A stretch of 64,000 bases of DNA from Leucoraja ocellata (GCA_036785375.1 JAWMAR010000115.1:4588001-4652000); one strand, 5' to 3'; positions 9,488 through 61,609 are shown, counted from the stretch's first letter. Numbers and translations: made by a program. Notes: generated by a model from the sequence alone, not told the origin.

Positions 9488-9576
9488 GTAGCGGGGGGGA
9501 GGTATCAAGGGGGGTAATAACGGCAGGGGTAGAGGAATTAGAGCAGGGTATCAGTGGGGAAGCGGAAAGTCAAAAT

Positions 9577-18816: not shown

Positions 18817-18946
18817 NNNNNNNNNNNNNNNNNNNNNNNNNNNNNNNNNNNNNNNNNNNNNNNNNNNNNNNNNNNNNNNNNNNNNNNNNNNNNNNNNNNN
18901 NNNNNNNNNNNNNNNNNNNNNNNNNNNNNNNNNNNNNNNNNNNNNN
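18817..18946. other. Assembly gap
   Basis: Run of N. Confidence 1.
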
Positions 18947-25002: not shown

Positions 25003-25071
25003 TCATGTTTTTGTGTTTGTTACTTGAGCATAGATGACAGATGCCTCATCTTCCTTTGAAGCAACAAGGTT
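25003..25071 (-). CDS. Terminal coding exon with ITIM ([22 protein letters not shown])
   Basis: Strong tttctttctctttcag acceptor, phase 0, V-x-Y-x-x-V motif, TGA at 25005-25003. Confidence 0.82.
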   Translation of the reverse strand, partial: NLVASKEDEASVIYAQVTNTKT

Positions 25072-28000
25072 CTGAAAGAGAAAGAAATGCCAATTGTATT
25101 TAAGACATTTGCTGTTGTCGCTGTTTAGATCAGTAAACAGATTACAAATTTAATATATACGTGTACGATCTGGGATTTCATCAACAAGAATCAATATACT
25201 TACAGTGTCTGATGCTTGATTATCGCTGCTGCCTGTAATAAATGCAAACATCACAATTAAAATATGACACTGGTGGATTATGTTGACAAAGGAAACGACA
25301 AATGGAATATAAAAGTCTAAAGCTTACTATATTTTGCTCTTCCTGACAATAGATCAATAAGCCATTGAATTCCAGAAAACCCATCTGCCATCTGTATGCT
25401 CATACCTCTGCATTTACAGTGAGCTGCAGGAATGGTCAGCATGAACAAGACATCTTTGTAATTCGAGGAGGATTGTGCTTATCACTTCTAGCTTAGTCAG
25501 GAGTTGTGCAGAAGATTGTTCTTCAGAATGCATAAATGGTGTCTCGGTTTCACTTCTGATCACCAACGACAATGCATAACAGTGCTGTAACAGCAGCCTG
25601 GATGTCACTGGTTGGATCTCTGGAGTGGCTATTGTACCTATTCAGAGTAGGCTAGGGGACCAGAACCAACTTAGAGTAGGTTAGGGGACCAGAACACACC
25701 CACTGTAGTTTAGGGGACCCGAACACATTTGGAGAAGGCTGGGGAGGCTGAACCCACCCAGAGAAGATTGGGCTCCTAACTGAGCCTCAGCTGACTGTCC
25801 CGCTTCATGTCGATGGGCAGAGTGAGGGGTTTTATCCCAGGAATGCCCGACGCTGTTGTAAGGTGGCCAAAGACAGCAAGGTATCAGACTACTCAGTGCC
25901 AATAGTCCTCACTGTGACAAAAGATTAAAACATATTTAAATAAAGCTATTTTACCACCAGATGCTTTTGGCTGGAAGGAGATGGATCCATAATGAATATC
26001 TTCCTCTGCATCTGTGGAAATAAGTTGGAAACAAATAATTTATTTGTATTTGAAAAAGGATGAAGTCAATGCAGGGTCATGATACGAAACACTGACCATC
26101 GCTTTCCCTCCATAGATGCTGCTCGACCCATAGAGTACTTCCAGCAGTTTGAAAAAAACCCTCCATGAAAAGTCACATCTCTTAACCTCCTTGTTTTGAT
26201 CTTCCTGGGATGGTGGAAATTATGAAGAGAATTTGTGTTAATTTGGATTGTGAAGTTTAGAAGAATGACAATGGTTCTCATGGAAACATAGAAAATTCCA
26301 ACAGGTAGACCAGTCTTGATGGAGGAAAGATGTTCCCTGTTGGGGGAGACCATGACCAGGGGTAAAGGTTTAAGACATGAGACAATAAGGATTAAGATGA
26401 TGAGAAAAAATAAACTGTGAAATTCTCTACCACAGATTTTGCTGGAGCCAAATCATTCAGTACATTTTAGGAGTTAGTCAAATTAAGTCGTTAAATTTAT
26501 TGACAGATACACAACAATGGCGAGGCATAGGAACAATGATAATTTTGCCTGCAGCAGCATCAGAGGCACAACACCTAAATGAAGCATAAATTACAAAGAC
26601 CACTGGTTAGCGGAAAAAAAGACTGCAAAACACAAATTAGAGAGCAATTAAATGCTGCCGCACCCGCTGAGTTTCTCCAGCACTTTTGTCTGTTTCGATT
26701 TTCAATTGGCAGTTCCTTCTTGAATACTTAGAGACCAGTCATATGTGGACTAAGTTCAAGGAATTTGGGGAGATATGATCAGCTGAGGTTCAGTTTAGTT
26801 TATTGTCATGTGTGCCGAGGTTCAGTGAAAAGCTTTTGTTGCATCAGCAGAAAGACAATATATGAATACAACCAATCCCTTTGCAGTGGAATACAATTGG
26901 TCCATACTGTGAAACAAGGTAACCAATTTATATTTTTCTCATTAAAACATGAGCAATGGCTGATTTATTGAAAGGTTCCTTCAGATTTTTCAAGAAAGAT
27001 TACTCTGTTGTTCACCTGATTCATCAGAAATGTGATCTAAATTCTGGCAAAAACAATACTGTCTAACGTAGAAACAAAGAACTGCAGATGCTGGTTAATA
27101 CACAAAGGGACACAAAGTGCTAGAGTACATCTGCAGGTCAGGCAGCATCTCTGGAGGACATGTATAGGTGATGTTTCGGGTCGTGACCCTTCTTCAGACT
27201 CAAAAGAAGGGTCTCGATCCGAAACATCACCTATCTACCATCTATTAATGATGCTCAAACCAAGCTGAAATGTTGATGTTATTTTCACTTTTAAACAAAG
27301 TCTGAACTACTGGCAAAGTGAATTGGAGGCATTTAATGCCAGATGATATTTTGTGAAAGGGATGGTGACTTTTGAAAGGGTAAGTGTTGTCCATTCTTTA
27401 GAGAGCTGCTAACCAAGCTGTTAATCAAATAAAATAATAAAATCAGGATCAACAGTAAATTAGGAGTGTGAATATGTTGTTCATGGTGATGTCTCAACAT
27501 TCATGGGTTGATCATGATAGTCCAGTGAAAATTAGTCAATTGACCAATGCAGAGTAAGACCTGCAGTTGGATGAGGAAGTTTGGGGCTAAGGGGTGAATT
27601 GACACAAGAGAGACTGTTGCATTGATCAATTAGTTTGTGTGCTTGCGATTTCCTTCCTCACATTCTTGTTAGAAAACTGTGAAATGTGAAATAGTTTGCT
27701 TCATCAAATACAAGACCTCTACAACTAGAGATTCATTGACTGAGTCATCTATTTACCTTCTTGCTTTGTCTTCCTACTCACAGACATATATTCAGCAACA
27801 CGGCTCATCTCAGGTACTGGGGTCTCATTAATTTCTGGAAAATAAGTATTATTTTCTGATTAAGACTTTAATCCGGCTTGATTTTAAAGAAGCTGCAATC
27901 CAGTGTTTAAACAGTAACCCATTAATAATCAGATACACCAGAATGACCAGGAACATGGTTTCAGATGTGTCAGAGACATTTAATGGTGGGATAAGACCAT

Positions 28001-34000: not shown

Positions 34001-37000
34001 AAAGCCGCACAAATTGGCTAATGTTTCTCCCTGCATTTTGCTGCACTGTTCTCAGGAGCCACCTCAATTAAAGCTCAGCCAGCTTCACATGACATATAAT
34101 GTCATCTGGATGTCGGATACCAACCTTTGGGACAGGCACGTTACCCCGAGTTCTGTCTTGGTGGGTAAGCGTTTGATGGCACAATTGTGATCTTAGGGTC
34201 GTGTGTGATCAGACCATCGCATGCTCTCAGTTTAGGAATGTTCCTCATTTATAAGACCAACAATTGTAAAGAAGGACTATGCAGGAGATTTGTTTGTAAC
34301 AAAATAAAATCACAATTCTTCTACGTTTTAAATGTACTTTTAAATTACTAATGGCAGAAAGAATAGGAATGAGAAAATGGACACAAATATTATGAATTTT
34401 CTCTTATGCTTCTTGTTTTCACATTACCTGCCATCTGCTGAATTTCATCAGGGTTGCCATAAAGGTGAGATTCGCCTTCTGTTTTTCTTTTTGATCGTGG
34501 AGCTTTCTGACTTTGATTGCCTAAAGCTGTTCAGAAAGAGGACATCATTTAAATTGTTTTCACCTTTTATAAAGTCAAAGAGTCATAGAACCGGGTCCTT
34601 TAGCTCAACTAGTCTATACCATCCAAGCTAGTCCCGTTTGCCTGCAATTGCACCATAACCTTAACCTTTCTTATCCAAAGGTTCAAATGTATTTCATTGT
34701 CACATGCACCAATTAAGGTACAATTAAACTCAATTTATCATAGTCATACTAGAGAAAGCAACAAGACACACAACCACATAAGTTAATATAAACATCCACT
34801 TCAGCTGATTCTCCACATTCTTCACTGTGATGGAAGGCAATAAGTCTAATCTTCTTTGCTCTTTATTCTCCCGCGGTCGGGGCAGTCGAACCATTTGCAG
34901 TCGGGGCGATAGAAGCTCCTGCAGCCGATGATTGAAGCCTTCAGGTCAGGGTGGTCGAAGCTCCTGCAGCTTGGAGCTCCCGAAGTCAATCCCTAACCAA
35001 GGGACCGTGAGCGCCACGATGTTACATCCGCAGGCTCCCACGGTTGGAGCTCCCAAAGTCAATCCCCCACAGGGACCACGAGCACCTCGATGTTAGGCCA
35101 CAGTGCAGATGGAGATATGATACAGAAAAAAAAAAAGCATCTTCATCGCGGTAACTGCATCAGATAACTGCAGAAAAGCACCTAATGTCATTAAGCATTC
35201 TCCGCATGGCAACACAGGTAGACAGGACAATCCACATTGCATAAATAATGTTTTAAAAGACCACAAAAGGTCTGAAATCAATTTCTCAATAACATCAGTA
35301 CAAACAGATAGTTTTCTTATCCCAAATATATTGTTCTTTTCTCCTTGTAACAAAGGTAACATTGTCATTGATAATTTGGGGGATCTGTGCTGCATTCAGG
35401 ATGTCTTCATGTACTTTACCTGTAGGCTTGCGTTTTCTTTGACAGAACACCACTGCCAGTATAATGACGAGGAGAACAGCCAGACTCCCGATAATTACAA
35501 CAATGGTGAATATAATGGTGTAATTCTCTGTCAAAATAATAAACACAGAGTTCACATTTGTAGAATAAATGGACATCATTCAATAGCTCCTCCAATGACC
35601 AGGCATTAACCACACTGACTAATTTTGATCAGAAGTCTTGAGTTTAACTTGTGTAAGTTATTGGGGCAAATCCTCCAAAATTATGGAAGAACTTGGATAA
35701 GGACATGGATATTTTAAAAAGACAGATTTGCTGGCTGCAACGGAAAAAACCCCAATCCACAGAAAGATTCAAACCTGACTGGCCTGTGGATTTGGGCATC
35801 ACACAACTATGCGAATGATGTGGACAGGAAGGGCTGAGACAGAGATAATGAGATCATCTTGGATAAACAAAGGAAGGAACCAGCCTCAGCAGACGGTGGT
35901 AAACAGGCCAGCCCAAGCTCAATCACCATCTTGGACGACCCATCCATCGAGACAATAGGAGCCCATCCAGGCGATGGGATAATGATCAGGCTAAGGGATC
36001 ATGACATCAGCAAACCCCTTATCATCGGAAGCCTATTGTTCATGCCAGATCGAAACTGGGAATCATCAAAATAATCCTTTTATCCAGAGGACCACCTGGG
36101 GGTTTCAAAGGAAGCTCAGGTATAAAACAGGAGTCAAGCCAGAACTCTTTCTCTCTCTCTGCTCTGCTGGACGGCTTGTGAGCCCAACTGTAAGTCTCTC
36201 TTTCTGCTCTGCTGGACGGCTCGTGAGCCCAACTGTAAGTACCCCAGTGACCTGGTGAAATTCCCGAAATAGGATAGATGTTGAGAAGATAAAGGGAAAG
36301 GGGGGTAAAATTGTGTAAAGTTAGTTTTACGACGTGCCCGATAGTTTTCCGTCCATAGTCTTAGTTTAAAGCATAAGTTTAGCCACGTATTATGTAGTGT
36401 TGTTGAGATTCGATTTCTTAATGTTTAATAAAGCCTGTAAATTTTAGACTTGCTTTGAGTCCATCTTGGTTTCTGTTTTCCCTCATCAGCACACTCTGGT
36501 CAATTCAACCTTTTATCATATCCCACCATAATTCCGAGGTCTAGAACTAGGGGAATCCCTTTTGTTGTATTCTCTCTCTTGGAAACCGCTCGAGTGGAGT
36601 GGTGGCCGTTTGACCCTCCGACAAGGGAGAGAATAACTCGGGCAGTTGGGCCCGAAGTGAAATAAAAGGAAACGCAAAACCCCTACACTTGTGATCCAGA
36701 TTAACTAAGACACAAAGAACTGAAGATGCTAGTTTAGCAATAAAAGTGTTGGAGAAACTCGGCTGGTTAGGCAGGTGACATTTCGGGTCACAGGCCTTTA
36801 GTCTGATGTAGGGTAGTGCGTTCGGCTGAACACACTATGGGAACTTCACTCGCCCCCCTGCAGGAACTATACATCAGGAGGTGCAACTCCAGAGCCAACA
36901 ATATCATGAGAGACCCCTTCCACCCCTGCAACAGACTGTTCCAGCTGCTACAGTCAGGCCAACGCCTCCGTTGCTATGCGGTGAGAACGGAGAGGTTGAG

Positions 37001-49000: not shown

Positions 49001-52000
49001 TTCCTTGATGTGGGAGTATCCTTCATTAACTTCTTCCTTGCTCAATTTCTAATAATTAATGTGATGGCATGTTTAATTTCTTTATCGTGATACATTATTT
49101 TGATTGGTCCAGGGATAAGGGTCAGGCAATCTTGTCCATCGACTTTCGACAGACTGGCTAATCAGGACTGTGAAAATGGATTGGTCTGAGAAAAAGGTGT
49201 CTGTCTTCTCTGTACCTGATTTTCTGGCCAGCTCACTCTTTGCTCTCTCTGATCACTTTGGTCTCTGAAATCTCTGATCCCTCTGCTCGAAAATTTCTCT
49301 AATCTCAAAAGTCTCCACTGAGCCCCTCCTTCACTTCGTCCCACAGTCGGACATGCCCAACTCCAGTGTCCTGTCCCACTTCAAGTATAGCATTGGTCTG
49401 GTTCTAGTATGTTATTTCTTCTCCAATTATGTCTCAGGAAAATTGGTTCTAAAGCAGGCATCATAGCATCTCATATCTATCTATCCTATCTATATNNNNN
49501 NNNNNNNNNNNNNNNNNNNNNNNNNNNNNNNNNNNNNNNNNNNNNNNNNNNNNNNNNNNNNNNNNNNNNNNNNNNNNNNNNNNNNNNNNNNNNNNNNNNN
49601 NNNNNNNNNNNNNNNNNNNNNNNNNNNNNNNNNNNNNNNNNNNNNNNNNNNNNNNNNNNNNNNNNNNNNNNNNNNNNNNNNNNNNNNNNNNNNNNNNNNN
49701 NNNNNNNNNCCTCGAAAACCAGAAGCAAAAATGCGGAGATGTTTACATATTTCGATACGGATTTAACATGATTTCAGAAATCCACTCCTCTCTAAATTTG
49801 GTCAATTATTTCCCCAGATTTTGAATATAATTGTTCACAAAACTCACGTTTTAAAAAATAATCTCTCTCTCTCTCTCTCTCTCTTTGAGAGGCTGGTCAA
49901 GTGTGCCTGGGTTCTGGACTTTCTCACGGCCAGGCCACAGGTAGTCAAGATGGGTGGAAATACATCGAAGTCCCTCACCCTGAGAACAGGATCCCTCCAG
50001 GGTTGCGTCCTCAGCCCCCTATTATACTCCCTGTACACCAACTCGATAATCAAGTTTGCTGATGACACTGTGGTGGTGGGCCTGATCTCGGATAACGATG
50101 AGAAGGCCTACCGGGAAGAGGTGGCTGAACTGGCACTCTGGTGTCAGGACAACAGCCTCCTCTTGAATATCAAAAAACTAAGGAGCCGATCGTGGACTTT
50201 AGGAGGGCACATTATCCGAGGACGTACACACCATTGAAGATAAATAGGGAAAACTGTGGATAGAGTAAGCTGTTTTAAATACCTGGGAGTCCACATCTCT
50301 GAGGATATGACATGGACATCACATGCTGCAGCACTCGTGAGTAAGGCAAGGCAGAGCCTTTACCATCTCAGGCAATTGAGGAAATTCAGAGTGTTTCTGA
50401 GGATCCTCCAGTGCTTCTACACAGCGGCTGTGGAAAGCATCATGTCCGGAAATATCACAATTTGGTTTGGGAATTGCTCTGCCCAGGATAAGAAAGCTCT
50501 GCAGAGAGTAGTGCGTTCGGCCGAACGCACTATGGGAACTTCACTCGCCCCCCTGCAGGAACAATACATCAGAAGGTGTAACTCCAGAGCCAACAAGATC
50601 ATGGGAGATCCCTTCCACCCCAGCAACGGACTGTTCCAACTGCTACATTCAGGCAAATGCCTCCGTTGCCAAGCTGTGCGAACTGAGAGGATGAGAAGGA
50701 GTTTCTTCCCAGAGGCCATTAGGACTGTAAACTCCTATATCTCCAGGGAATAGCTTTACTGTACCATTCTACTGTTGTGTGGTGTCTTTTTAAAATTGCT
50801 GTTTTTCTCCTTTTTCTTCCCTCCCTCCCTCAAATATGTGACATGTGAATATGTGATTCTGTTTGTTGTTTGTTTGTTTTTTGCACAATTCGCAATCATT
50901 GCCACTTTTCATTTCACTGCACATCTCATATGTGTATGTGACGAATAAACTTGACTTGACAAGTTTGTTCCCAAACAATGGCCAAAATCTTTACAGTGCG
51001 CCTGTAAGTCACTTACACAATCAGCCCACAATCAATCCTTCACATCTGGGTACCCCAAAAGGGCCTGACCCACTTACGTGTCTATGGCACGCAAATTACG
51101 TGGTCCTCGTGGTCGCGTTGAGCTGAGACGGTCGAGCGAAGGTCAGGCGAGATGACATGCGCCCGCTCAACAGTCTGGAGCGTGTGACGTCATTTGAAGA
51201 TGGACACAAAATGCAGGAGTGACTCGGCGGGACCAGCAGCATCTCTGGAGAGAAGCAATGGGTGATGTTTCGTGTCGAGACTCTTCTTCAGTCTGAAAAG
51301 AAGGGTCTTGACCCGAAACGTCACCCATTGCTTCTTTCCAGTGATGCTGCCGGTCCCGCTGAGTTCCTCCTGCATTTTGTGTCTATCTTCAACTTTCTTT
51401 GCCCTGCTCTGGGAGTAGAAGTGGGGGCAGATCCGGACTTCAACGGCCGTGAGCCCCAGGCCGAGCTCGTTTGCCTGCTTCTGCTGCTGTTGGAGGTGAG
51501 ACATTGCGTCGCGCCAGGGTCTTGGGCCTGTCCCACTTTGGCCGTCAGTTCCACGACAGGCCGGTGGCGCACAAAGATTTCGTTCACTTCAAGAATTTCA
51601 GAGCCCTGCGCGATGTCAGCACCAGCCCTGCAAAACCCCTACCCATCTGCGCTTCTAAGTGGGACCGGCCTTGCGCAGCCATAGGATGCCCGTACGCCTC
51701 AAGCGACCACGAGCCAAGGACGCGTAAGTGGGACAGGCCCTTTACACACAATCTCACACACAAAAACTCACACAAGCTTCCAATCCTGTAAACAATTTTA
51801 AAGTCTGTAAACAATCCTAAATCGTAAACAATCTAAGGTGCTTTAATCTAAGGTGCAAAGAAGCAATCAAACACACTTCAGCAGCAAATCTCCTACACGT
51901 AGCACTTCAATCTAGACAAAGGCAAATTAGCTCATAACACGCAAGGAAAATCGTACTCAAACAAGAGATTTTACTACATATCACTATCAAGCAAAAACAC

Positions 52001-54593: not shown

Positions 54594-54625
<32 letters not shown>

Positions 54626-57600
54626 ACTCCTACAAACCAATCCTAAATAAAGATCATACAACACATTAATTGACAGTTCCCTAACCCAATCACAAAATAC
54701 CCCATTACATTGTTTCTACATAAAGTTTCTAATGGAAGACAGTTCCCTTAAGTAAAGAAACATTTATCCAGGTAACATAAACAATTCGAGCAAGGCTCCA
54801 TGCCTTGACCAATCACAAGATAACAGTGCAAAGACCCTGCAACATAGTTAACAGTGGTATTATAACCTACCTGTCCCCAACCAATCCCATTTATGCATTT
54901 GCAGCATGGTCAGCTCTTTCTGCAAAATCTTCATATATAGTGACAAAAGAGAGGACATCGGGCCATCACCCTGTGCTTAGCTTCCTCCAGGACCCAGACA
55001 TTCTGGAGCCATGAGCCTCATGGCTTTGCAGTTTTCCCAGAATGATGCCAAGCAGGTTCTGCAAAGGCAGAAAGCCTCCATTTTGTCACATACTGAATTG
55101 GCCAATATTATCAACTTCAGCACAATGTCCAAGTCACCCTAATCATAACAGCTGGCATCCTTAGTGACATCACAACAACCTGGAGCTCATTGCTCTTAGG
55201 ACAGTCGAATTGGTCGTAGACTTTAGGAGACAACAAGTTGATTTGATTCATGCAGGTGAACTGAAATGAATCCCTTGATTCTCCTGTGTAGCTCCATCAA
55301 TCTTAGTGCCACCATTTTATATTTACACCATACCCCAGGGTAAAGGCTATGTCCACGTCTTGCAGTAAAAGCCCACAGGTGATGTCAGTGCTCACTGTAC
55401 AATATGTGGAACAGTTTGATATCAGGAACTATTTAATACCTGCTGCAAAGCAGCTTTGGACTCACCCTGATCCACTTCAACATTGGTGTCTCCAGTTAGA
55501 ACAATGGAGCCATTTTCCTGCACTTCCCACGTGTACAGATTGGGACTTCCTGCTCCGACGTGTTGGACCATCAGATAGACGGTGTTATTCAGATGGATCT
55601 GATCAGTGTTGTTCCTCCTGTTTGCCTGAAATAAGCCTCTTGGTTTCCAGTAAAGACTGACGGTATCTGGGTGTCTGGAGATGGTACAGCTGAGGATGAT
55701 GTCACTGCCTATTACTGGCCTCGGTGAGTCTGCCTCAACTGTGGAAACAAACACATGGTTCAGTTCCCCACCAGCTTTCTGAACTGCTGCGGGCAGAATT
55801 GTCTTTTTCCTGCAAACAGACAGTCGGCCGAATGTTGAGCTGCCTCGCTGAGTGATGTCATCAACACTTCCAGGTAGTGACCACCTGTCCCTCTCGTCAC
55901 CCACATCAATACTGCCAGGTAGGGATTTTTTTAGTACAGGAGAAACACAGAACTGCAGATGCTGGTTAATATATAAATGTACATAAAATGCAGGAGTAAT
56001 TCAGCGGATCAAGCAGCAACTACAGAGGACATAGATAGGTGACGTTTCAGGTCGAGACCCTTCTTCAGACCGATTATTTTTCTTCGATGTCTTTTACTAA
56101 GGGGTGATCATATTGGGGTGAATCATGAGAGGCATATCTATAGTAAATGCACATGACCTTTTTTCCAGGGTTGCTGAATCAAAAACTAGATATGTTTTTG
56201 GTGAAGGGGACAGATGTGATATACCCCATAATATGAGGGGCAAGTTTTGACAAAGAGGGTGGTACATGAACATACTTTTTGGAAAGATCGAGCAGAGGAA
56301 GTGATTGATGCAGGTACAGCAAAATTTAAAATACATTTAAACAGATATATGGAAAAAAAGGTTTAACGGAGAAGGCCCAAAGAGGGCAAATTGGACGTTT
56401 GAATGGGTAGTTTATCAGTGTGGGTGAATTGGGCCAAAGGTCATGTTTCAGTGCTGTTGGACCCTATGACTCTATTACCTTTGATCCCAAATAGTTCCCA
56501 CTGTCTCAGGATTTTCCTAGCGGGCTCTGTTTGAGTCCAGGTGAATAGTCCTGCAAGTTCAAAGGTGGGCTTCCTGATCCTCAGATTAAGGGTACCCCAG
56601 TCCACACGCATGCTCTGGGAAATGCCTGGTATTTGATTGTACTCATCACTCCATTGTACAGCCCACCGCTGATCTTCTCTGTGAAAAGTGGCCAATTGCT
56701 TTGTGGTTTGTTGCCCTGAGTGTGGCCTCCATTCCAAGTCAATGGGGCCATTTCCAGGACTGTCTGGTCCTTTCATTACAAAGTTGCCTTCCTGATGGAA
56801 AAAGTAAATAGAATCTCCACATCCTGTTGGAAAAGAGAAGAATCTTTATTAAATAGTACATTATAATTCATAATCTGGAACAGCATAGAAACAGGCACTC
56901 TGTAGTAATCTGTCAACGCAGACCAGTGGGTATCCTTCCACGCAGACACAAGAAAATGCAGATTATGGAATGTTGATCAAATGCTGGAGTGCTGGAGAAA
57001 ATCAGTCAGGCAGAATCTGTGGAGGGAATGGATCGATGATATTTCGTGTCACGCCCCTTTTTCAGACATGGAATGGGAGAGTGAAAGCTGGGGAAGGGAA
57101 GTAGGCATGAGGCAAAGCATGATGAGTGATAGGTGGATACAGGTGGGAAATGGTGATGAGTAGATGGATGGAGATAATGACAAACGCGAGGGGTGAAATG
57201 GAAACCGAAGGTTGTCAGATCCATAAAAGAGGGAAGGATATTGGTGGAAGTGGAGCAAGAACATGAAAGCAAAATTGTGCAATTGGAAGGGGGATGTGGA
57301 AAGAGGAAGGGGGAGGGAATAGGGTAGTTTGGTGGTGAGATAAATGTGTGCACAATGAAGTGGGGGGAGAAATGGGGTTCGGGATGTTTTATTTGAAATT
57401 TGAGAATTAATTGGTCATTATAGAGTTAGACCACTCACAAACCAGAAGACCATATTCCACTTTCAAATTTCAGGGCATCAAAACTCAATCATGATGAAGT
57501 ATGAAGAGAAAACCCTGAGTCACTTACCACGGGGCTCCTGATAATACGGGACAAAAATCCGGGGCAGGTCTTGATGAAACAAACCACATATCCAGTTCCC

Positions 57601-60600
57601 TGTGCCTCTCTCAGCTTTCTGAATAACCAAACTATATGATTTTTCTTTCCCAGTCAGCGTATTTTCTCCAACACTTTTGCCATCGCCATTGATCCAAACC
57701 AGTCTCATTGATTCATTGACGTGAGACACAGAGCAGGTAAGTGTAACGTTGTCTCCCTCAGTCATTGCATCAGACGGTTCAGCTGTGACTGTGGAAACAA
57801 GCAGGTTGTTTAGATTTTAAACATTGAGTTCATCAGTAAAAACACTGCCAACATTATGTCTCCTACCTTTTACTGTGATTAGATCAATGGTTGGAAGTTG
57901 AAGTGCTTCCATTGAACATGTGTAAAGTCCGGCATCTTGAAAAAAAATCGGAACAATCCTTACATTGAAATCCATGCCATTAAAGTGTTTCACTACGGTC
58001 ATCAGTCGATTCCGGAAGTAGGTCCGGTTGACATTGATGGGCTGAGAGAGTCCGGCAGATGCTATTACTTTCTGCTGTTGTTGAAGGCGACGAGATGTCC
58101 AGGTCCACCGAGCAGTGGAATAGTGATACGGCCAATAACAAACGAGGTGAAGTTCATTGTGATCTGTGCTGGAGCGGTAAAGCGTGTACCTCCCATTATA
58201 TAAATCTGTATCAGTGAGATAGAAGATAACTCCTTTCAGTATTAGTTATTCTCATCCGCGTTTCAAATGTAACATATTCCATAAATGCCGCACCAAAACT
58301 CATGAGATGTTCATAAAATAAAATGTCGTGTACAGCAGTAAATTGCAGTGAAGTTTGGATATTCGACTCTACATTTCAACATTAGGTTCGCCCCCACACC
58401 CGACTGTCCGGGGATCTCCCGGGATGGAATGAAACCTCCCGGAGACTCCCGAGAGCGGCCCGGGAAGTGAATCTCTCTGTCAGTCTGCAGGAGGTGGTGC
58501 AGGTTCAGGCTGCGGAGAGAAGCAGCGCAGTGGACGTCTGCGCGGGGCCCGATCCGGACAGGTTGGCAGGTCAAGTAGGTCGGGTCTTCCCGTCCCATCA
58601 TTCCCATTATTCCCACCATCCCTCTCCCATTCACACCCATTGATTCCCTGTTCTTCCCTGTCCCGGGTCCTGCTCCCAGCTCAATGCTGATCCGAAGCCC
58701 GAGTCTGCTGCAGCTGGAATCACTTCAAACAGCAGCAGGACTCGGAGAGAAGGGTCAGTGAGGGGAGAGGGGACGGATTGTTGTTCAGTGCTGATGTGTG
58801 CACCGGGACCCCCAGTGTGAGTGTGAGCAGCAAGTGCTGGTGGTTGTCATGGTGACTACACTTTCTATCTGACACTTTGACGTGAGTCCTGTATCAGTAT
58901 CTCAGTCTCAGATACTGGAGCATTGATGGCAAGTTAAAGTGACAAAATACTTTACTGAACAATAGTTACAGAAATACATCCCCCTCCTGTGCTGTGTGTC
59001 TGTCACACAGAGACAAGCAGGCAGCTGCTCCACAGAGAGACTTTCTGGAAACTTCTCCCTGATCATTGCAGCATTTTATAAACGAGAGCAGTTGGTCACT
59101 ATCCACAGTTCTTCACTTGTTCCCGATGTTGGAGAAGTCCAGAACAAGGGGTCACAGTTTAAGGATAAAGGGGAAATCTTTTAGGGCCGAGATGAGGAAA
59201 ACTTTTTTCACACAGAGAGTGGTGAATCTCTGGAATTCTCTGCTGCAGAAGGTAGTGGAGGCCAGTTCATTAGCTATATTTAAGAGGGAGTTAGATGTGG
59301 CCCTTGTGGCTAAAGGGATCAGGGGGTATGGAGAGGCGGCAGGAACAAGATACTGAGTTGGATGATCAGCCATGATCATATTGAATGGCGGTGCAGGCTC
59401 GAAGGGCCGAATGGCCTACTCCTGCACCTATTTTCTATGTTTCTATATTTCTATGTTTCACAGGGCGCACGCATAATATTACAAGAAGCACCGTGATACA
59501 AGTGTCTACTTGATATGTAATGGGAGATGTTTACACTTACACTTGTTTACAGTAAAATCTCCACCACTGGTGTGAACGATGTTTCCGTTTTCCTGCACAT
59601 CACACACATACAACTTCCCATCCTCCACTGTAACATGTCGGATCATCAGATAGACCGTGTTCTTCAGGCGGATCTGATCAGTGTTGCTCCTGTTCTTCTG
59701 GGATGAGTCCATTGGTCTCCAGTGAAGACTGACTGTATCTGAGAGTCTGGAGATGGTGCAGCTGAGTGTGATGTCACTGCCCAGCAGAGGGCGCTGTGGA
59801 CTTGCCTCAACTGTGAAAAACAGATGAATGAGATTCAGAGTGAGTAGTGGTGTGGACAGTCCAATGACTGAGCTCAAGGCTGACAGCCTGGCTGAAAGTC
59901 AGGACAACTTCTCCCCCAGTGCTCTCAGACCCCTGACATGCGTGGCTGAACACATTGACGAAGCGAGATGCCGACAGTTCGCCGTGGGACTGCTGGTGGA
60001 ACCGGCAACATTCAGGCTTTGTTTTATTGAAGAATGCATCTATTTCCACTCCTAAATTGATCTGATTGCTCTCAAGAGGTGAACTATGGCTGAGCCCAAG
60101 TTCCACAGACAATGAACTTCCATCGACAAGGTAACATTAAGCAGCAATGTCACCCCAGAGCCACTGCACGGAGACATTGGTTTCATACCACCTTGCCGCG
60201 ATCACCTTACCGTGTGCCGGCGAGAAGACCGTGGTATTCGCTGCGGGGTGGATTCATTGTTTTTCTGTTCCCAGTGAAGTCATCAAACTATTTTCACTCC
60301 TGCTAATCATTTCAGTATCAATGAACATAAACACTTCCCCAGTTGTTTTACTGGGAGATTCTCTTTTCACCGTGTGGAAGAAGTCTCACATTTCCCACCA
60401 TCTCTCATCATTATAGGTGACAATACAGAGATAAATTAAACATTATTGATCCTTATCGCACCCACTCACCTTTGATCCCAAATATTTCATATTGTTTCAG
60501 GATTTGCTTTCTCGGTTCTGTTTGAGCCAAAGTGAAAAATCCCGCCCATTTAAATATGGGGTTATAAATTGTCAGATCAAGTGTACGGTAATTGACAAAC

Positions 60601-61609
60601 GTCTCCGGGTACAAGTCCACCTTACTCTCGCCAGCGGACTTCTCTTTGATCCAATAGTCCCTCATTCTTCTAAAAGTCGACAATTTTCCGATATCCTTCC
60701 CTGAGTGTGGTTTCCATTCCCAGACAACAACAATGTCTTTCTCAGGATTGTCCGGTCCGTTTAAATCAATCTTGACTCCGTTATCCAAGAAATACATTTG
60801 ACTTCTATTTCCTGTTACAAATACGAACAATGAAGAATTAACATTTAAAACACATTTTCCCCACCCCATATCTGTAATCATTAATTTTGAACAATGCAAT
60901 TCCAGACAGTTGTGATCATCCTTGGAAACCCCAGCGAGCAAGATACGGTTTGTGAAGAGATGTCTGTCTGGAATAACCTGGCCTGATCCAGGGATATTTC
61001 ATCACATGAGAGGAGCGAGTGGGAGGGGGCCAGAGGTGGGGATAGGGGTTTGTGGTGGGGCAGTGGATGAGCTCCACCCGGTTTTGAAGGAACTTTGCAG
61101 GAGCGTGAAGTGAAGACATTGCGTGTGGTTCTCGGGCTGCGAATGGATCGATAAGTCGAGGGCAGTTCCACCAGCCTACACTGTGATGGGAAGGTGTTGG
61201 GCGAGGATGGTGTTGACAACAGTGTTAAAGGCTACAGAGGCTGAGCGGGATGGGGAGGGAGAGTTTAACTCTGCAACAAGCTCACAGGAGGCAATTTTTG
61301 ACTTCGATAAGGACCGTGTCAGTGCAGGAGGAGAGCGAGTTGATGGGAGGGGCTTAAAAATAGACTTCCAGCAAGGGATGGCATGGATTTGTGAGGCAGC
61401 AGCACATTCAGGACGTGGAGAGGAAAGCGAGATTGACAATGGGGTGCGGCTTTACAGTGATAATGATAACATGATGCAACGTTATTGTGATCGGTGAAGA
61501 GAAAGCACTTACTCTGTGTTGAAACAGGTCGCAGCAGGAAAACAAAGTAACCGAACATCAAACCAATTGGTAAACTGCCGCAGAGAAACATCGGCCTCAT
61601 TTTGTGCAT
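25003..61609 (-). CDS. Eight-Ig-domain type I transmembrane receptor, CD4/LAG-3-like ectodomain with ITIM-bearing tail (15 coding exons, ~987 aa)
   Basis: Hand-spliced exons: 61609-61513, 60811-60470, 59810-59541, 58205-57867, 57788-57528, 56823-56479, 55738-55466, 47597-47271, 46460-46191, 35527-35420, 34526-34428, 27834-27757, 26011-25955, 25232-25204, 25071-25003. All introns are GT-AG and phase 1 except the last (phase 0). The total is 2964 nt with no internal stop. The family label is inferred from motifs, not from a search. Confidence 0.85.
25204..25232 (-). CDS. Exon: cytoplasmic 4 ([10 protein letters not shown])
   Basis: 29 nt, tttattacag acceptor, GTAAGT donor. Converts phase 1 to phase 0, which the last exon requires. 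Confidence 0.72.
25955..26011 (-). CDS. Exon: cytoplasmic 3 with ITIM ([19 protein letters not shown])
   Basis: 57 nt, ttatttccacag acceptor, G|GTAAAA donor, phase 1-1; contains I-x-Y-x-x-I. Confidence 0.8.
27757..27834 (-). CDS. Exon: cytoplasmic 2 ([26 protein letters not shown])
   Basis: 78 nt, ttattttccag acceptor, AG|GTAAAT donor, phase 1-1. Confidence 0.75.
29089..33886 (+). mobile_element. DIRS1-like tyrosine-recombinase retrotransposon, near complete but inactivated
   Basis: gag-like ORF pieces 29293-30519; RT (YLDD) and RNase H (TDAS, LEM, IDN, AD) ~30540-32041; methyltransferase-like (DLFAS, YAFPPF) 32042-32434; recombinase ([19 protein letters not shown]) to 33404; inverted termini and ICR; no TSD seen. 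Confidence 0.92.
34428..34526 (-). CDS. Exon: cytoplasmic 1 ([33 protein letters not shown])
   Basis: 99 nt, ctctttctgaacag acceptor, G|GTAATG donor, phase 1-1, open frame. Confidence 0.75.
35420..35527 (-). CDS. Exon: transmembrane segment
   Basis: 108 nt, phase 1-1. [35 protein letters not shown]: uncharged hydrophobic stretch, juxtamembrane Cys, basic stop-transfer cluster. Confidence 0.85.
35652..36687 (+). mobile_element. Solo LTR (~1036 bp)
   Basis: TGTAAG...CTACA ends, 4-bp TSD CTTG (35648-35651, 36688-36691), TATAAAA at 36121, AATAAA ~36427. Confidence 0.85.
36810..37243 (+). mobile_element. Rex1-like 3' fragment
   Basis: Matches the 3' part of 49890-50960; (CTTGA)n tail. Confidence 0.75.
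38065..38352 (+). mobile_element. tRNA-derived SINE with CR1-like tail (HE1-type elasmobranch SINE)
   Basis: B-box GGTTCGATCC, GGGCCGAAGGGCCTGTTTCC 3' hairpin, (CTAAA)n tail. Related pieces at ~13320-13420, 20360-20470 and 39085-39630 (minus). Confidence 0.7.
40250..40840. repeat. GC-rich minisatellite, ~20-21-bp unit GCTGGGCCCAAGCCACCCC(C)
   Basis: More than 20 imperfect tandem units; accounts for the cluster of low-complexity ORFs here. Confidence 0.9.
41090..43310. mobile_element. Cluster of decayed Rex1-like (41090-42072, +) and CR1 fragments (both strands)
   Basis: [21 protein letters not shown] and [10 protein letters not shown] remnants; [13 protein letters not shown] fragments in both orientations. 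Confidence 0.7.
43951..45450 (+). mobile_element. Non-autonomous Helitron-like element
   Basis: 5' TCTATATTACTAAAAG directly after a host A; subterminal hairpin TGGGACCC-AAC-GGGTTCCA (~45425-45443); interrupts a minus-strand CR1 tail; terminal CTAG is imperfect. Confidence 0.6.
44852..45155. repeat. 48-bp tandem repeat (~6 copies) inside the Helitron-like element
   Basis: Unit CACCCTGCTTGAAATGGTATGAAACTGCATTTGAATTTGGTGGCCTTG; first two units start at 44852 and 44900. Confidence 0.9.
46191..46460 (-). CDS. Exon: Ig domain D8 (C2-like, WxC)
   Basis: 270 nt, phase 1-1. [32 protein letters not shown]...[11 protein letters not shown]; paralogous to D4. Confidence 0.9.
47271..47597 (-). CDS. Exon: Ig domain D7 (V-set); absent from the ORF track
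   Basis: 327 nt, phase 1-1, hand-translated: [35 protein letters not shown]...FGNRL...[18 protein letters not shown]...LITVT; paralogous to D3. Confidence 0.9.
49496..49709. other. Assembly gap inside the D6-D7 intron
   Basis: Run of N. Confidence 1.
49890..50960 (+). mobile_element. 5'-truncated Rex1-like LINE
   Basis: [36 protein letters not shown]; one frameshift; (CTTGA)n tail. Confidence 0.85.
51059..51742. mobile_element. MITE-like non-autonomous DNA transposon with an internal Penelope-derived palindrome
   Basis: TIRs AAGGGCCTGACCCACTTACG / CGTAAGTGGGACAGGCCCTT. Related TIR ends at ~13090 and ~19291-19307. Confidence 0.7.
52271..53651 (+). mobile_element. 5'-truncated CR1 inserted in the ERV leader region
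   Basis: Nearly identical to 15535-16933, with small indels; TTCTATGT tail. Confidence 0.9.
54294..54311 (-). promoter_or_regulatory. Retroviral primer-binding site, tRNA-Pro
   Basis: TGGGGGCTCGTCCGGGAT, the 18-nt PBS-Pro known from MLV-type retroviruses, directly after the LTR end. Confidence 0.92.
55466..55738 (-). CDS. Exon: Ig domain D6 (C2-like, F-strand Cys replaced by Trp)
   Basis: 273 nt, phase 1-1. [31 protein letters not shown]...[11 protein letters not shown]; paralogous to D2. Confidence 0.88.
56038..56071 (-). ncRNA. Minimal type I hammerhead motif in a Penelope-derived repeat (cleanest of several copies)
   Basis: GGU-CUGAAGA-A-GGGU-CUCG-ACCU-GAAA-CG-UC-ACC: conserved core boxes, stem II, 3-bp stem I, GUC triplet, palindromic ACGU in place of stem III. 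Confidence 0.6.
56479..56823 (-). CDS. Exon: Ig domain D5 (V-like, lacks the B- and F-strand cysteines)
   Basis: 345 nt, phase 1-1. [36 protein letters not shown]...[23 protein letters not shown]...WELFGIK; paralogous to D1. Confidence 0.85.
57528..57788 (-). CDS. Exon: Ig domain D4 (C2-like, WxC)
   Basis: 261 nt, phase 1-1. [32 protein letters not shown]...[12 protein letters not shown]; 78-nt intron separates it from D3. Confidence 0.9.
57867..58205 (-). CDS. Exon: Ig domain D3 (V-set)
   Basis: 339 nt, phase 1-1. [35 protein letters not shown]...FRNRL...[18 protein letters not shown]...LITVK; V-set D-x-G-x-Y-x-C motif. Confidence 0.9.
59115..59458 (+). mobile_element. Short CR1 3' end
   Basis: [14 protein letters not shown]...GIRGYG and TTCTATGT tail; ends ~80 bp from the D2 donor. 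Confidence 0.9.
59541..59810 (-). CDS. Exon: Ig domain D2 (C2-like)
   Basis: 270 nt, phase 1-1. [31 protein letters not shown]...[13 protein letters not shown]; canonical C-W-C. Confidence 0.9.
60470..60811 (-). CDS. Exon: Ig domain D1 (V-like, no cysteines)
   Basis: 342 nt, phase 1-1, cag/gtgagt. [22 protein letters not shown]...VWEWKPHSG...[18 protein letters not shown]...YEIFGIK; paralogous to D5. Confidence 0.85.
61513..61609 (-). CDS. Exon: signal peptide [32 protein letters not shown]
   Basis: Basic N-terminus followed by a hydrophobic core. Ends in phase-1 donor A|GTAAGT; acceptor-like ttccaaacag lies 3 nt upstream of the ATG. Confidence 0.8.

What the first reader, a model, noticed from the sequence alone, without database searches (positions are those of the whole stretch)
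25003..61609. Complete eight-Ig-domain CD4/LAG-3-like inhibitory receptor hidden among transposons
Seen: 15 exons splice into an open 987-aa frame of leader, (V-C2-V-C2)x2, uncharged TM and tyrosine-motif tail. D4 and D8 have W-x-C in the F strand (GNWICG, RNWTCV). Established: alternating V-C2-V-C2 with WxC in C2 domains characterises the MHC class II-binding CD4/LAG-3 family, whose members have up to four domains; CD4 tails carry a Cx(C/H) Lck clasp. Here the ectodomain is doubled, the clasp is absent and canonical ITIMs are present. Inference: a possibly undescribed chondrichthyan inhibitory receptor lineage related to CD4/LAG-3. Caveats: D1 is not split over two exons as in CD4, and no syntenic marker gene is visible in the window.
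Basis: partly seen in the sequence, partly recalled or inferred. Interest (0 to 1): 0.85.

Follow-up and report, generated by a model that had tools for sequence, protein, structure and literature searches.

The report
Eight-Ig inhibitory receptor gene, skate
This is a real, intact gene for a cell-surface receptor with eight antibody-like domains and an inhibitory tail; it belongs to a large, still unnamed receptor family of sharks, rays and some primitive bony fishes whose building blocks look most like those of the T-cell co-receptor CD4.

Summary
Observation confirmed. On the minus strand, 15 exons with AG/GT borders give an open frame of 2964 nt (987 aa plus stop): leader, eight one-exon Ig domains, an uncharged transmembrane exon and five tail exons with two canonical ITIMs. 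The N gap lies inside the D6-D7 intron; ortholog models join D6 to D7 with no residues missing.

Interpretation partly supported. The gene is one member of a multigene family: 156 proteins were fetched, nearly all named "uncharacterized", from sharks, rays, chimaera, sturgeons and eel. The family is built from four domain types in fixed cyclic order a-b-c-d (V-like without cysteines, C2, V, C2 with WxC). It has inhibitory (ITIM) forms and activating-type forms with a lysine in the membrane helix.

Predicted a-b and c-d modules match CD4 two-domain modules best of all solved structures (Z 14.7-14.8, rmsd 2.5 Å). LAG-3 is the best single-stretch sequence match.

It is not CD4 or LAG-3 itself. 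The b domains lack WxC, the tail has no Cx(C/H) or (F/Y)xxL(D/E) motif, and synteny could not be tested. I found no paper describing the family. The scan noted a similar gene 68 kb away (untested).

The parts
61513..61609 (-). Exon 1: ATG at 61609 and a hydrophobic leader ([32 protein letters not shown]); donor in phase 1
   Evidence: 94 % identical to the leader of L. erinacea XP_055498695.
60470..60811 (-). Exon 2: D1, a-type. V-like domain with no B/F-strand cysteines
   Evidence: Splice sites. No Pfam hit. The a-type profile finds only 35 proteins among 1.84 billion. hhalign a~c 95.7 %. V fold in the model of the a-b protein P0010.
59541..59810 (-). Exon 3: D2, b-type C2/I-set domain with canonical LSC...W...YVC
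   Evidence: Pfam Ig_3 9.7e-7 and ig 7.8e-6. Splice sites.
57867..58205 (-). Exon 4: D3, c-type V domain (LVC...W...YTC)
   Evidence: Pfam V-set 2.9e-4. Splice sites. Followed by an intron of only 78 nt.
57528..57788 (-). Exon 5: D4, d-type C2 domain with WxC (GNWICG)
   Evidence: Pfam ig 2.3e-6.. WxC in 187 of 191 family d-type domains.
56479..56823 (-). Exon 6: D5, a-type. Second copy of the Cys-less V-like domain
   Evidence: Acceptor corrected to 56823 from the ortholog alignment. A contig of run X5 joins 56822 to 57527, which is the D4-D5 splice.
55466..55738 (-). Exon 7: D6, b-type with the F-strand cysteine replaced (LYTWEV)
   Evidence: The same YxW change occurs in 52 of 185 family b-type domains. 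Joint 55738|56479 in runs X1 and X5.
49496..49709 (.). Assembly gap (N) inside the D6-D7 intron. It is not part of the coding sequence
   Evidence: The D6/D7 protein junction is identical to the ortholog model. Flanked by transposon ORFs.
47271..47597 (-). Exon 8: D7, c-type V domain
   Evidence: Pfam V-set 9.7e-7.. 95 % identical to XP_055498692.
46191..46460 (-). Exon 9: D8, d-type C2 domain with WxC (RNWTCV)
   Evidence: Pfam Ig_3 1.2e-5.. 98 % identical to XP_055498692.
35420..35527 (-). Exon 10: uncharged transmembrane helix and basic stop-transfer (FCQRKRKPT)
   Evidence: 97 % identical to the ortholog.
34428..34526 (-). Exon 11 (C1): tail exon with HLYGNP (YxN)
   Evidence: 100 % identical to the ortholog.
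27757..27834 (-). Exon 12 (C2): tail exon with AEYMSV
   Evidence: 100 % identical to the ortholog.
25955..26011 (-). Exon 13 (C3): tail exon with the ITIM DIHYGSI
   Evidence: 100 % identical to the ortholog.
25204..25232 (-). Exon 14 (C4): 29-nt exon (SSDNQASDT) that shifts the phase from 1 to 0
   Evidence: Found by a splice and phase search. The peptide is present in XP_055498692.
25003..25071 (-). Exon 15 (C5): tail end with the ITIM SVIYAQV and the stop codon TGA at 25005-25003
   Evidence: 95 % identical to the ortholog.

Best explanation
The stretch holds one intact gene on the minus strand for a 987-aa type I membrane receptor of a skate; its closest annotated relative is in Leucoraja erinacea.

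Shown:
- The ectodomain is two tandem copies of a four-domain block a-b-c-d: a V-like domain without the disulfide, a C2 domain, a V domain, and a C2 domain with WxC.
- The gene belongs to an ancient, unnamed multigene family found in sharks, rays, chimaera, sturgeon and eel. Family members reuse the four domain types in fixed cyclic order. They come either with this ITIM tail or with a lysine in the membrane helix and a short tail.

Predicted:
- Each V-C2 pair forms a rigid rod with one beta-strand running through the junction. That geometry matches CD4 D1-D2 and D3-D4 better than any other solved structure.

Inferred:
- The membrane-distal V-like domains bind a ligand on another cell.
- On engagement, Src-family kinases phosphorylate the two ITIMs (IHYGSI, VIYAQV), which recruit SHP-1/SHP-2 and damp activation. 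The YxN site may recruit Grb2.
- Lys-TM relatives would signal through an acidic ITAM adaptor, which makes this a paired-receptor system.
- The family is probably a distant sister of CD4/LAG-3 rather than a member of that family.
For: Gene model:
- 15 exons give an open frame of 987 aa, with all borders AG/GT.
- The tail and D5-D8 are 95-100 % identical to XP_055498692, with identical junctions.

One gene with eight domains:
- The D4-D5 intron is only 704 bp, and D5 has no leader of its own.
- 31 of 156 family proteins have the architecture abcdabcd.
- 21 models of 951-1033 aa were found in many elasmobranchs. One example is Pristis XP LOC127570086 (991 aa), which has the same tail exons.
- The L. 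erinacea paralog XP_055498695 has the same D4/D5 junction peptide.
- Intron-less contigs of related organisms join D2-D3, D3-D4, D4-D5 and D5-D6 at my borders.

Family:
- The a-type profile finds only 35 proteins among 1.84 billion.
- Full-length searches gave 64, 90 and 115 family hits.
- 17 proteins carry the TM motif Y(L/F)xVKL and 57 carry a C-terminal ITIM.

CD4 likeness:
- hhalign gives a~c 95.7 % and b~d 94.8 %.
- phmmer of the family member P0019 against PDB gives LAG-3 first, at E 6e-9.
- The family profile gives LAG-3 at 7.7e-11 and CD4 at 5.9e-9, each as a single long stretch across a V-C2 junction.
- The AF2 models have continuous strands across the junctions.
- VIA-align of the c-d module: the top 24 rows are all CD4; 1cid has Z 14.8, rmsd 2.5 Å, 163 of 177 residues aligned.
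- The a-b module against 48,161 PDB representatives: 1cid ranks first with Z 14.7, rmsd 2.5 Å, 165 of 177 aligned.
Against: - The NCBI model of the closest ortholog (XP_055498692) starts inside D5 and omits D1-D4.
- The window's D1-D4 are only 75-91 % identical to any fetched skate protein.
- No RNA of this species at this locus was seen. The spliced contigs differ from the window by 7-10 % and the runs' RNA label is a guess.
- Continuity across the N gap is unproven.
- The CD4/LAG-3 link is weak in sequence. pIgR (6.9e-11), CEA (4e-14, a sum of weak domains) and antibody chains score in the same range.
- Foldseek ranks pIgR above LAG-3.
- Single window exons give no significant CD4/LAG-3 hit.
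- The structures are AlphaFold predictions of database relatives, not of the window's own spliced product.
- ITIM function, the ligand and the adaptor pairing are inferred from motifs alone.
Confidence: 0.72

Rival explanations
1. The CD4 likeness is generic or convergent. On this reading the family is an independent IgSF paired-receptor family, or a branch of an already described one (CEACAM-like, Siglec/CD22-like, pIgR/CD300/MDIR-like). The rod-like V-C2 geometry would simply follow from having no linker between the domains.
For: - pIgR, CEA and antibody chains score like LAG-3 and CD4 in the profile search, and pIgR ranks first in Foldseek.
- The first hits outside the family in the 5.8-billion-protein search are teleost CD22/Siglec-like proteins, at E 2.5e-5 to 8.8.
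- The a-type domain lacks the disulfide, as CEACAM N domains and CD2/SLAM V domains do (those two are recalled). NTB-A, CD48 and 2B4 appear among the single-domain matches at Z 12-13.
- CEACAMs are reported in cartilaginous fishes (PMC5112662, passage).
- MDIRs are a skate paired multigene family (PMC3031540, passages).
Against: - Only CD4 aligns both domains of each module at low rmsd (2.5-4 Å over 163-177 residues). Other two-domain hits have rmsd 4.3-14 Å or cover one domain only.
- The a-type profile finds no CEACAM N domain in the PDB; its 4 hits are all ParM at E 0.18.
- The CD22 matches cover only the generic F-G-A-B stretch.
- No domain of the gene has the second cysteine pair or the WC(R) motif of CD300-type V domains (the motif comes from PMC3031540).
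- None of the 64 + 90 + 115 listed family hits is named MDIR, CEACAM or Siglec.
- WxC, called 'very unusual' and CD4/LAG-3-typical (PMC10768021), is in 187 of 191 d-type domains.
Confidence: 0.2
2. The 987-aa frame joins two genes or is an assembly chimaera. Either D1-D4 (or D1-D6) belong to one gene and the remaining exons to a neighbour, or the two sides of the N gap are not contiguous.
For: - NCBI's model of the closest ortholog begins inside D5 (XP_055498692).
- There is an N gap in the D6-D7 intron.
- The family is tandemly clustered, to judge from the LOC numbering.
- Gene models of many lengths and partial architectures exist.
Against: - The D4-D5 intron is 704 bp, with no room for a TM exon, tail exons, a promoter and a leader.
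- D5 has no signal peptide of its own, and the ortholog model starting 'MKGPDSPG' lacks one, so it is a truncated model.
- The D6-D7 and D4-D5 junction peptides equal those of independent models.
- abcdabcd is the second commonest architecture, with 31 of 156 proteins.
- The Cys-less D6 type (YxW) sits in the membrane-proximal block of ray and shark orthologs alike.
- A contig of a related organism spans the D4-D5 splice.
Confidence: 0.06
3. It is a true extra member of the CD4/LAG-3 family: a doubled LAG-3-like MHC class II-binding inhibitory co-receptor.
For: - V-C2-V-C2 order, with WxC in the membrane-proximal C2 of each block.
- No D1 intron, as in shark CD4/LAG-3.
- LAG-3 is the best single-stretch PDB sequence hit.
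- The modules are CD4-like.
- The tail is inhibitory, like that of LAG-3.
Against: - The b-type domains (D2, D6) never have WxC: 0 of 185.
- The tail is encoded by five exons. It has no (F/Y)xxL(D/E) and no Cx(C/H) motif. These are the features PMC10768021 uses to define LAG-3 and CD4.
- It is a multigene family with activating partners, whereas CD4 and LAG-3 are single-copy by default.
- Automatic annotation never names these proteins CD4 or LAG-3.
- The residues of CD4 that bind MHC class II are poorly conserved even among CD4s, so binding cannot be read from the sequence.
Confidence: 0.1

Closest known systems
CD4 (T-cell co-receptor; solved structures 1cid, 1wio, 7t0o)
   Same: - V-C2-V-C2 order.
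- One V domain without the disulfide. That CD4 D3 lacks it is recalled, not tested here.
- WxC in a C2 domain.
- A beta-strand running through each V-C2 junction (predicted).
- Best rigid two-domain structural match for both modules: Z 14.7-14.8, rmsd 2.5 Å.
- No D1 intron, as in shark CD4.
   Different: - The ectodomain is doubled to eight domains.
- WxC occurs only in the d-type domain and not in the b-type.
- The Cys-less V domain comes first, not third.
- There is no Cx(C/H) LCK clasp; the tail has two ITIMs instead.
- It is a multigene family with Lys-TM partners.
- Sequence identity is only 10-18 %.
LAG-3 (7tzg, 8dgg, 7tzh)
   Same: - Best single-stretch PDB sequence match for a family member (E 6e-9) and for the family profile (7.7e-11).
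- Highest identity among the structural hits, at 18-20 %.
- Inhibitory function is expected for both.
   Different: - The LAG-3 tail is one exon with (F/Y)xxL(D/E). Here there are five tail exons with classical ITIMs and a YxN site.
- The structural Z is lower than for CD4: 11.5-11.8.
Paired activating/inhibitory IgSF receptor families (KIR/LILR, SIRP, CD300, CEACAM1/3, fish NITR/LITR, skate MDIR)
   Same: - A multigene cluster.
- The same ectodomain types are combined either with ITIM tails or with a charged membrane helix and a short tail.
- The N-terminal and V-type domains differ most between paralogs: D1 75 % and D3 78 %, against D2 91 %.
   Different: - The domain types are not those of any of these families, as far as tested.
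- The fixed cyclic a-b-c-d order and block repeats up to 15 or more domains are unusual.
- The MDIR sequences and the MDIR paper could not be obtained.
Nurse shark 'obscurin-like protein' AGQ17915.1 / V9NJF3 and NCBI 'uncharacterized protein' models (e.g. XP_055498692, XP_072120630, Pristis LOC127570086)
   Same: Same family and, for the eight-Ig forms, the same architecture and tail. XP_055498692 is the near-identical ortholog of D5 to the tail.
   Different: These are database entries only. I found no paper that analyses them. The ortholog model lacks D1-D4. The nurse shark entry ends in a different, ITIM-less tail.

Membership tests
CD4/LAG-3 family | Four Ig-like domains in V-C2-V-C2 order, derived from a duplicated V-C2 unit | tested here: met
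   Pfam V-set for D3/D7 and ig/Ig_3 for D2/D4/D8. hhalign a~c 95.7 % and b~d 94.8 %. V and C2 folds in the models. Here the four-domain block occurs twice.
CD4/LAG-3 family | [quoted passage not shown] | tested here: not met
   WxC is present in D4 and D8 and in 187 of 191 family d-type domains. It is present in 0 of 185 b-type domains, which have (Y/F)xC in 131, YxW in 52 and other residues in 2.
CD4/LAG-3 family | Continuous beta-strand from V-domain strand G into C2-domain strand A, giving rigid rods | tested here: met
   Prediction only. Strands 88-102 and 288-303 in the P0083 model and 132-147 in the P0010 model. Best rigid matches are CD4 D3-D4 and D1-D2.
CD4/LAG-3 family | Tail motif: Cx(C/H) with multi-exon tail (CD4), or (F/Y)xxL(D/E) with single-exon tail (LAG-3) | tested here: not met
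   Five tail exons. No cysteine beyond the stop-transfer. The tyrosine motifs are YGNP, YMSV, YGSI and YAQV.
CD4/LAG-3 family | Position in the conserved LAG3-CD4 genomic region | not testable with these tools
   The window holds no other host gene, only transposon ORFs. Flanks of annotated orthologs were not fetched.
CD4/LAG-3 family | Database similarity searches give CD4/LAG-3 as top matches (the criterion used in PMC10768021, section 3.1) | tested here: inconclusive
   Among solved structures, LAG-3 is the top single-stretch hit. In the profile search, pIgR and CEA score alike. No CD4 or LAG-3 appeared in the word-indexed searches of 5.8 billion proteins, and no automatic name says CD4 or LAG-3.
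CD4/LAG-3 family | Binds MHC class II | not testable with these tools
   Needs a binding assay.
Skate MDIR (modular domain immune-type receptors) | V-type domains of the CD300/pIgR kind: two cysteine pairs and a WC(R) motif in strand C | tested here: not met
   No domain of the gene has more than two cysteines or a WC motif. The motif description is from PMC3031540. That MDIR domains share it is indirect, because the MDIR paper was not held. No MDIR-named protein appears among the family hits.
CEACAM | N-terminal IgV-like domain related to the CEACAM N domain, followed only by C2-type A/B domains | tested here: not met
   The a-type profile finds no CEACAM chain in the PDB, and none is in the top 50 structural hits. 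The c-type domains are internal V domains.
Inhibitory member of a paired IgSF receptor family (functional class) | Canonical ITIM(s) in the tail, an uncharged TM, and relatives with a charged TM and short tail | tested here: met
   IHYGSI and VIYAQV with an uncharged TM. In the family, 17 proteins have the mid-membrane Lys motif and 57 have a C-terminal ITIM. Signalling itself was not tested.

The most novel reading that the evidence does not exclude
This unnamed family is the surviving sister, or parent stock, of CD4 and LAG-3. On this reading it is a pre-gnathostome-radiation family of paired receptors made of cyclically repeated V-C2 rods (a-b-c-d). The four-domain CD4/LAG-3 ectodomain would be one register of that cycle: c-d-a-b corresponds to V with Cys, C2 with WxC, V without Cys, C2. 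The two MHC class II co-receptors would then have descended from an innate paired-receptor system, and some family members may still bind MHC-like ligands.
Probability: 0.25. Interest if true: 0.85.

Novelty: new variant of a known kind. Interest (0 to 1): 0.62.

Why it matters
CD4 and LAG-3 are treated as a two-gene family with no other close relatives. Their origin is open, and the lamprey 'CD4-like' candidate is disputed (PMC10768021).

Here is a large, old family found in sharks, rays, chimaera, sturgeon and eel. It combines CD4-like two-domain rods, the rare WxC motif, and both inhibitory and activating-type members. It would give comparative immunologists an outgroup for rooting CD4/LAG-3, and a testable idea of how co-receptors arose from paired innate receptors.

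Practically, it also shows that public gene models of this locus are incomplete: the closest ortholog model lacks four of the eight domains. More than a hundred 'uncharacterized protein' entries could be named and sorted by a simple four-letter domain grammar.

Tried and rejected
1. Single-exon searches gave only generic Ig hits or nothing.
- Pfam found no family for D1 or D5.
- The D4 exon against PDB gave partial CD276/PD-1 hits, and LAG-3 only at E 0.2.
- The D3 exon gave MXRA8 and CD226.
- The D1+D5 profile against PDB gave only ParM at E 0.18.

The joined step is left out. I used the exons singly, and database proteins as stand-ins. P0083 (XP_055498692) is 95-100 % identical to D5 through the tail. 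P0010 is a natural a-b receptor of a stingray.

3. MDIR as an identity. The paper (Cannon 2006, PMC3701310) and a review (PMC2823954) are not held. What I say of its abstract is recalled. I could not obtain the MDIR sequences, so the test is indirect.

4. The CEACAM, Siglec/CD22 and SLAM identities were considered and not supported.

5. Literature.
- Searches for 'obscurin-like' with 'nurse shark' and for the accession and LOC numbers found 0 papers.
- 'modular domain immune-type' and 'MDIR(s)' found one relevant paper.
- A search on paired receptors, ITIM and cartilaginous fish gave 14 papers, none on this family judging by title and abstract.
- Venkatesh 2014: I saw only passages of the main text, which do not contain 'obscurin'.
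- Supplements are closed. Supplementary Note XI of Venkatesh 2014 and Supplementary Files 3-6 of PMC10768021 may mention these sequences.

6. RNA evidence. No run on record as RNA holds the stretch. The laid contigs come from related organisms or paralogs and their RNA label is a guess.

7. I chose not to fetch the genomic locus of XP_055498692 with the look-up of encoding contigs. It would have brought in the stretch that corresponds to the N gap from what may be the same species.

8. Synteny with COPS7A/GNB3/USP5 was not testable in the window.

Full report
**1. What is in the sequence**

The gene lies on the minus strand. Stop-free segments on that strand hold eight Ig-like domains in descending coordinates, a hydrophobic leader after an ATG at 61609, and a transmembrane stretch.

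Each domain is one exon with a pyrimidine tract and AG acceptor, a GT(A/G)AG-type donor, and phase 1 on both sides. Five small tail exons were placed in three steps:
- local tblastn of three family proteins onto the window;
- reading of the splice sites;
- a phase-constrained search that found a 29-nt exon.

The full set of 15 exons adds up to 2964 nt, which is 987 codons plus a TGA stop at 25005-25003. No exon has an internal stop and no split codon is a stop.

I checked the frame by arithmetic and by the single split codons only. Exons were searched one by one, and database proteins served as stand-ins.

**2. The gap**

N runs lie at 18817-18946 and at 49496-49709. The second is inside the 7.9-kb intron between D6 (ending at 55466) and D7 (starting at 47597). 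It is surrounded by reverse-transcriptase fragments and an integrase core fragment.

The protein junction made by the two flanking exons, [15 protein letters not shown], is identical to that of the Leucoraja erinacea model XP_055498692. It is also collinear with the Mobula, Pristis and Amblyraja eight-Ig models. So no exon is missing in the gap, and order and strand are as expected. Physical continuity itself cannot be proven here.

**3. One gene or two**

Exon by exon, D5, D6, D7, D8, TM, C1, C2, C3 and C5 are 98, 99, 95, 98, 97, 100, 100, 100 and 95 % identical to XP_055498692 (535 aa). That model shows every tail junction I predicted.

However, the model starts with 'MKGPDSPG' inside D5, has no signal peptide and omits D1-D4. 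This is the strongest point for a two-gene reading.

Several points count against the two-gene reading:
- The D4-D5 intron is 704 bp, and D5 has no leader of its own.
- The neighbouring skate paralog XP_055498695 runs from an almost identical leader through D1-D7 with the same junction peptide [25 protein letters not shown].
- The architecture abcdabcd is found in 31 of the 156 family proteins held.
- 21 models of 951-1033 aa are listed from Pristis, Hypanus, Hemitrygon, Mobula, Amblyraja, Carcharodon, Heterodontus, Pristiophorus, Rhincodon, Chiloscyllium, Hemiscyllium and Stegostoma.
- A nurse shark GenBank entry (AGQ17915.1, 'obscurin-like protein', 916 aa) has eight domains.
- The loss of the F-strand cysteine in D6 (LYTWEV) is shared with the membrane-proximal block of manta and catshark proteins. 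The doubling therefore predates the shark-ray split.

**4. Reads**

No run on record as RNA holds the stretch. I laid four runs of coded organisms on 55460-61459 at 85 % likeness or more.
- Contigs about 90-93 % like the window cover the exons. The intron bins 57260-57459, 58260-59059 and 59860-60459 have depth at or near zero.
- Three transposon stretches have enormous depth.
- Joints fall on my borders: 55738|56479 (D5-D6; one contig each in X1 and X5), 56822|57527 with the cut one place further (D4-D5; one contig in X5), and 58193|59543 with 14 other letters between (D2-D3; X5).
- One X7 contig spans D3-D4 without the 78-nt intron.
- One X5 contig follows D6 with a d-type exon, an 'abd'-like form.

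These contigs are not from this locus, because 7-10 % of their letters differ. The runs' RNA label is a guess, and a DNA retrocopy is not formally excluded. They do show that relatives are spliced at these borders and join D4 to D5.

**5. The family**

A profile of D1+D5, which has no Pfam hit and no PDB sequence hit, found only 35 proteins at E up to 0.001 among 1.84 billion representatives. Full-length searches gave 64 hits, 90 hits and 115 family hits. In one search the last family hit is at E 3e-80 and the next protein is a teleost CD22-like protein at 2.5e-5.

The sources are sharks, rays and skates, the chimaera Callorhinchus, sturgeons (Acipenser, Huso) and the eel Anguilla, plus a weak loach hit.

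Nearly all are named 'uncharacterized' or 'hypothetical' protein. A few automatic names say obscurin-like, VCAM1-like or CD276 homolog. None says CD4, LAG-3, MDIR, CEACAM or Siglec.

With HMMs of the four domain types cut from alignment A2, every protein reads as a stretch of the cycle a-b-c-d:

| Architecture | Proteins |
|---|---|
| abcd | 54 |
| abcdabcd | 31 |
| shorter forms (abd, acd, ab, cd) | several each |
| up to 15 domains (a catshark model) | 1 |

An eel model has 20 domain hits, but it carries internal membrane-like stretches and may be several genes run together.

There are two tail classes. 57 proteins end in an (I/V)xYxx(I/V) ITIM. 17 have the membrane motif Y(L/F)xVKL, with a lysine in mid-helix, and a short tail without ITIM. 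That is the signature of paired inhibitory/activating receptors. LOC numbers run in series in several species, and a scan note reports a like gene 68 kb beyond this window (untested), so the genes are clustered.

**6. Relation to CD4/LAG-3**

*Sequence.*
- phmmer of the four-domain member P0019 against all PDB chains puts LAG-3 first: E 6e-9, with query 299-427 (end of c plus d) against LAG-3 108-240 (end of D1 plus D2). NCAM (7e-6), CD22 (5e-4) and CD4 (1.6e-3) follow.
- The 23-sequence family profile gives CEA 4e-14 (six weak domain hits, the best at i-E 0.068), pIgR 6.9e-11, LAG-3 7.7e-11 and CD4 5.9e-9 (profile 243-356 against CD4 11-117), and antibody chains from 1.9e-8.
- The link is therefore significant but not exclusive.
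- Profile-profile comparison inside the family gives a~c 95.7 % and b~d 94.8 % probability. The block is itself (V-C2)x2, the model proposed for CD4/LAG-3 (PMC10768021, section 3.1).

*Structure.*
- The AlphaFold model of P0083 was built with 39 family sequences. Its mean pLDDT is 72.6, and the ectodomain is mostly 80-94. Strands 88-102 and 288-303 run through both V-C2 junctions.
- The model of the a-b receptor P0010 (pLDDT 80.3) has strand 132-147 across its junction. Such through-going strands are described as rare and typical of CD4/LAG-3 (section 3.6).
- Foldseek ranks pIgR (6e-15) and then LAG-3 (4e-14, 18 % identity). CD4 has the best TM-scores, 0.28/0.40.
- In the rigid-body second look, the first 24 rows are all CD4. 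Rat CD4 D3-D4 (1cid) has Z 14.8, rmsd 2.5 Å and 163 of 177 residues on the c-d module. Human CD4 D1-D2 has Z 13.1-14.2 and rmsd 3.0-4.1 Å. LAG-3 D3-D4 has Z 11.5 and rmsd 4.2 Å. Other two-domain proteins reach Z 11.8 or less, with rmsd 8-14 Å or one domain only.
- In an independent search of 48,161 PDB representatives with the a-b model, 1cid is again first: Z 14.7, rmsd 2.5 Å, 165 of 177 residues, 18 % identity. All the following rows to rank 6 are single V domains.

*Features that fail.*
- WxC is confined to the d type (187 of 191) and absent from the b type (0 of 185), whereas CD4 and LAG-3 have it in both D2 and D4.
- The tail has neither Cx(C/H) nor (F/Y)xxL(D/E).
- The family is multigenic.
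- Synteny could not be examined.

I therefore read the family as CD4/LAG-3-like in build, and probably a distant relative, but not as a member.

**7. Other identities considered**

*MDIRs of the clearnose skate.* These are a paired multigene family with modular Ig domains. The original paper is not held, and what I know of its abstract is recalled. Passages of PMC3031540 liken MDIR domains to CD300, TREM and pIgR V domains, and describe the CD300 type as having two cysteine pairs and a WCR motif. No domain here has these features, and no hit is named MDIR. Scan notes place MDIR-like and CD300/pIgR-like clusters on other pieces of this genome (untested).

*CEACAMs.* They are reported in cartilaginous fishes (PMC5112662, passage) and have a Cys-less N domain (recalled). 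But the a-type profile finds no CEACAM chain, and the internal V domains do not fit the CEACAM layout.

*CD22/Siglec.* The hits cover only the generic F-G-A-B stretch.

**8. How it most likely works**

*Shown:*
- a type I protein with leader;
- eight Ig domains;
- an uncharged membrane helix;
- a 117-residue tail with two canonical ITIMs and a YxN site;
- membership of a family with Lys-TM counterparts.

*Predicted:* four stiff V-C2 rods in a row, hinged between the rods.

*Inferred:*
- The membrane-distal V-like domains bind the ligand. They differ most between paralogs: D1 75 % and D3 78 % against D2 91 %.
- ITIM phosphorylation recruits SHP-1/SHP-2 and inhibits the cell.
- The Lys-TM relatives pair with an ITAM adaptor.
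- The ligand is unknown.

**9. Novelty**

The sequences are public but unnamed. My searches found no paper on the family. [quoted passage not shown] Closed supplements (Venkatesh 2014 Note XI; Takizawa 2023 Files 3-6) might. I file it as a new variant of a known kind.

Noticed in passing
window 8534-12468 (+): An apparently full-length LINE. ORF1 (317 aa) has a GDSL-esterase-like domain. An uninterrupted 963-aa ORF2 has endonuclease and reverse-transcriptase domains. Truncated copies lie at 14058-16842 and 338-1138.
   Followed up: partly
window 28971-33404 (+), inside the C1-C2 intron: A retroelement with a reverse-transcriptase fragment and a tyrosine-recombinase (Phage_integrase) ORF, which is DIRS-like. 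It lies antisense to the receptor gene.
   Followed up: partly
window 48357-48767 (-) and 49821-50753, 52425-53562 (+), in the D6-D7 intron: An integrase core fragment and reverse-transcriptase fragments flank the N gap. The intron is mostly transposon debris.
   Followed up: partly
window 57789-57866 (-): The D3-D4 intron is only 78 nt long and contains an in-frame stop. A contig of run X7 lacks exactly these 78 nt.
   Followed up: partly
window 40073-40960, both strands: A G+C-rich stretch (53 %) that is open in several frames on both strands. Its translations repeat as GP(S/A)GGxLGPxGVAWAQxGW, so it looks like a tandem repeat and not a gene.
   Followed up: no
window 55464 / 57792 (joint in run X5): A contig of a related organism joins a D6-like exon directly to a d-type exon (the 'abd' form). 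This matches database isoforms that skip the c-type V domain, so c-exon skipping, or paralogs without c, are expressed.
   Followed up: partly
window 59060-59459, 55860-56259 and 56860-57059: Three short stretches have depths of thousands to millions in all four laid runs. They are highly repeated, transcribed transposon tails shared by several organisms.
   Followed up: no
P0013 (Anguilla rostrata XP_064185632, 2139 aa): An eel model has 20 domain hits of the same a-b-c-d grammar, interrupted by membrane-like stretches. It is probably several tandem genes fused by the annotation. It shows that the family also exists in a teleost.
   Followed up: no
window 18817-18946: A second N gap, outside the gene.
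   Followed up: no
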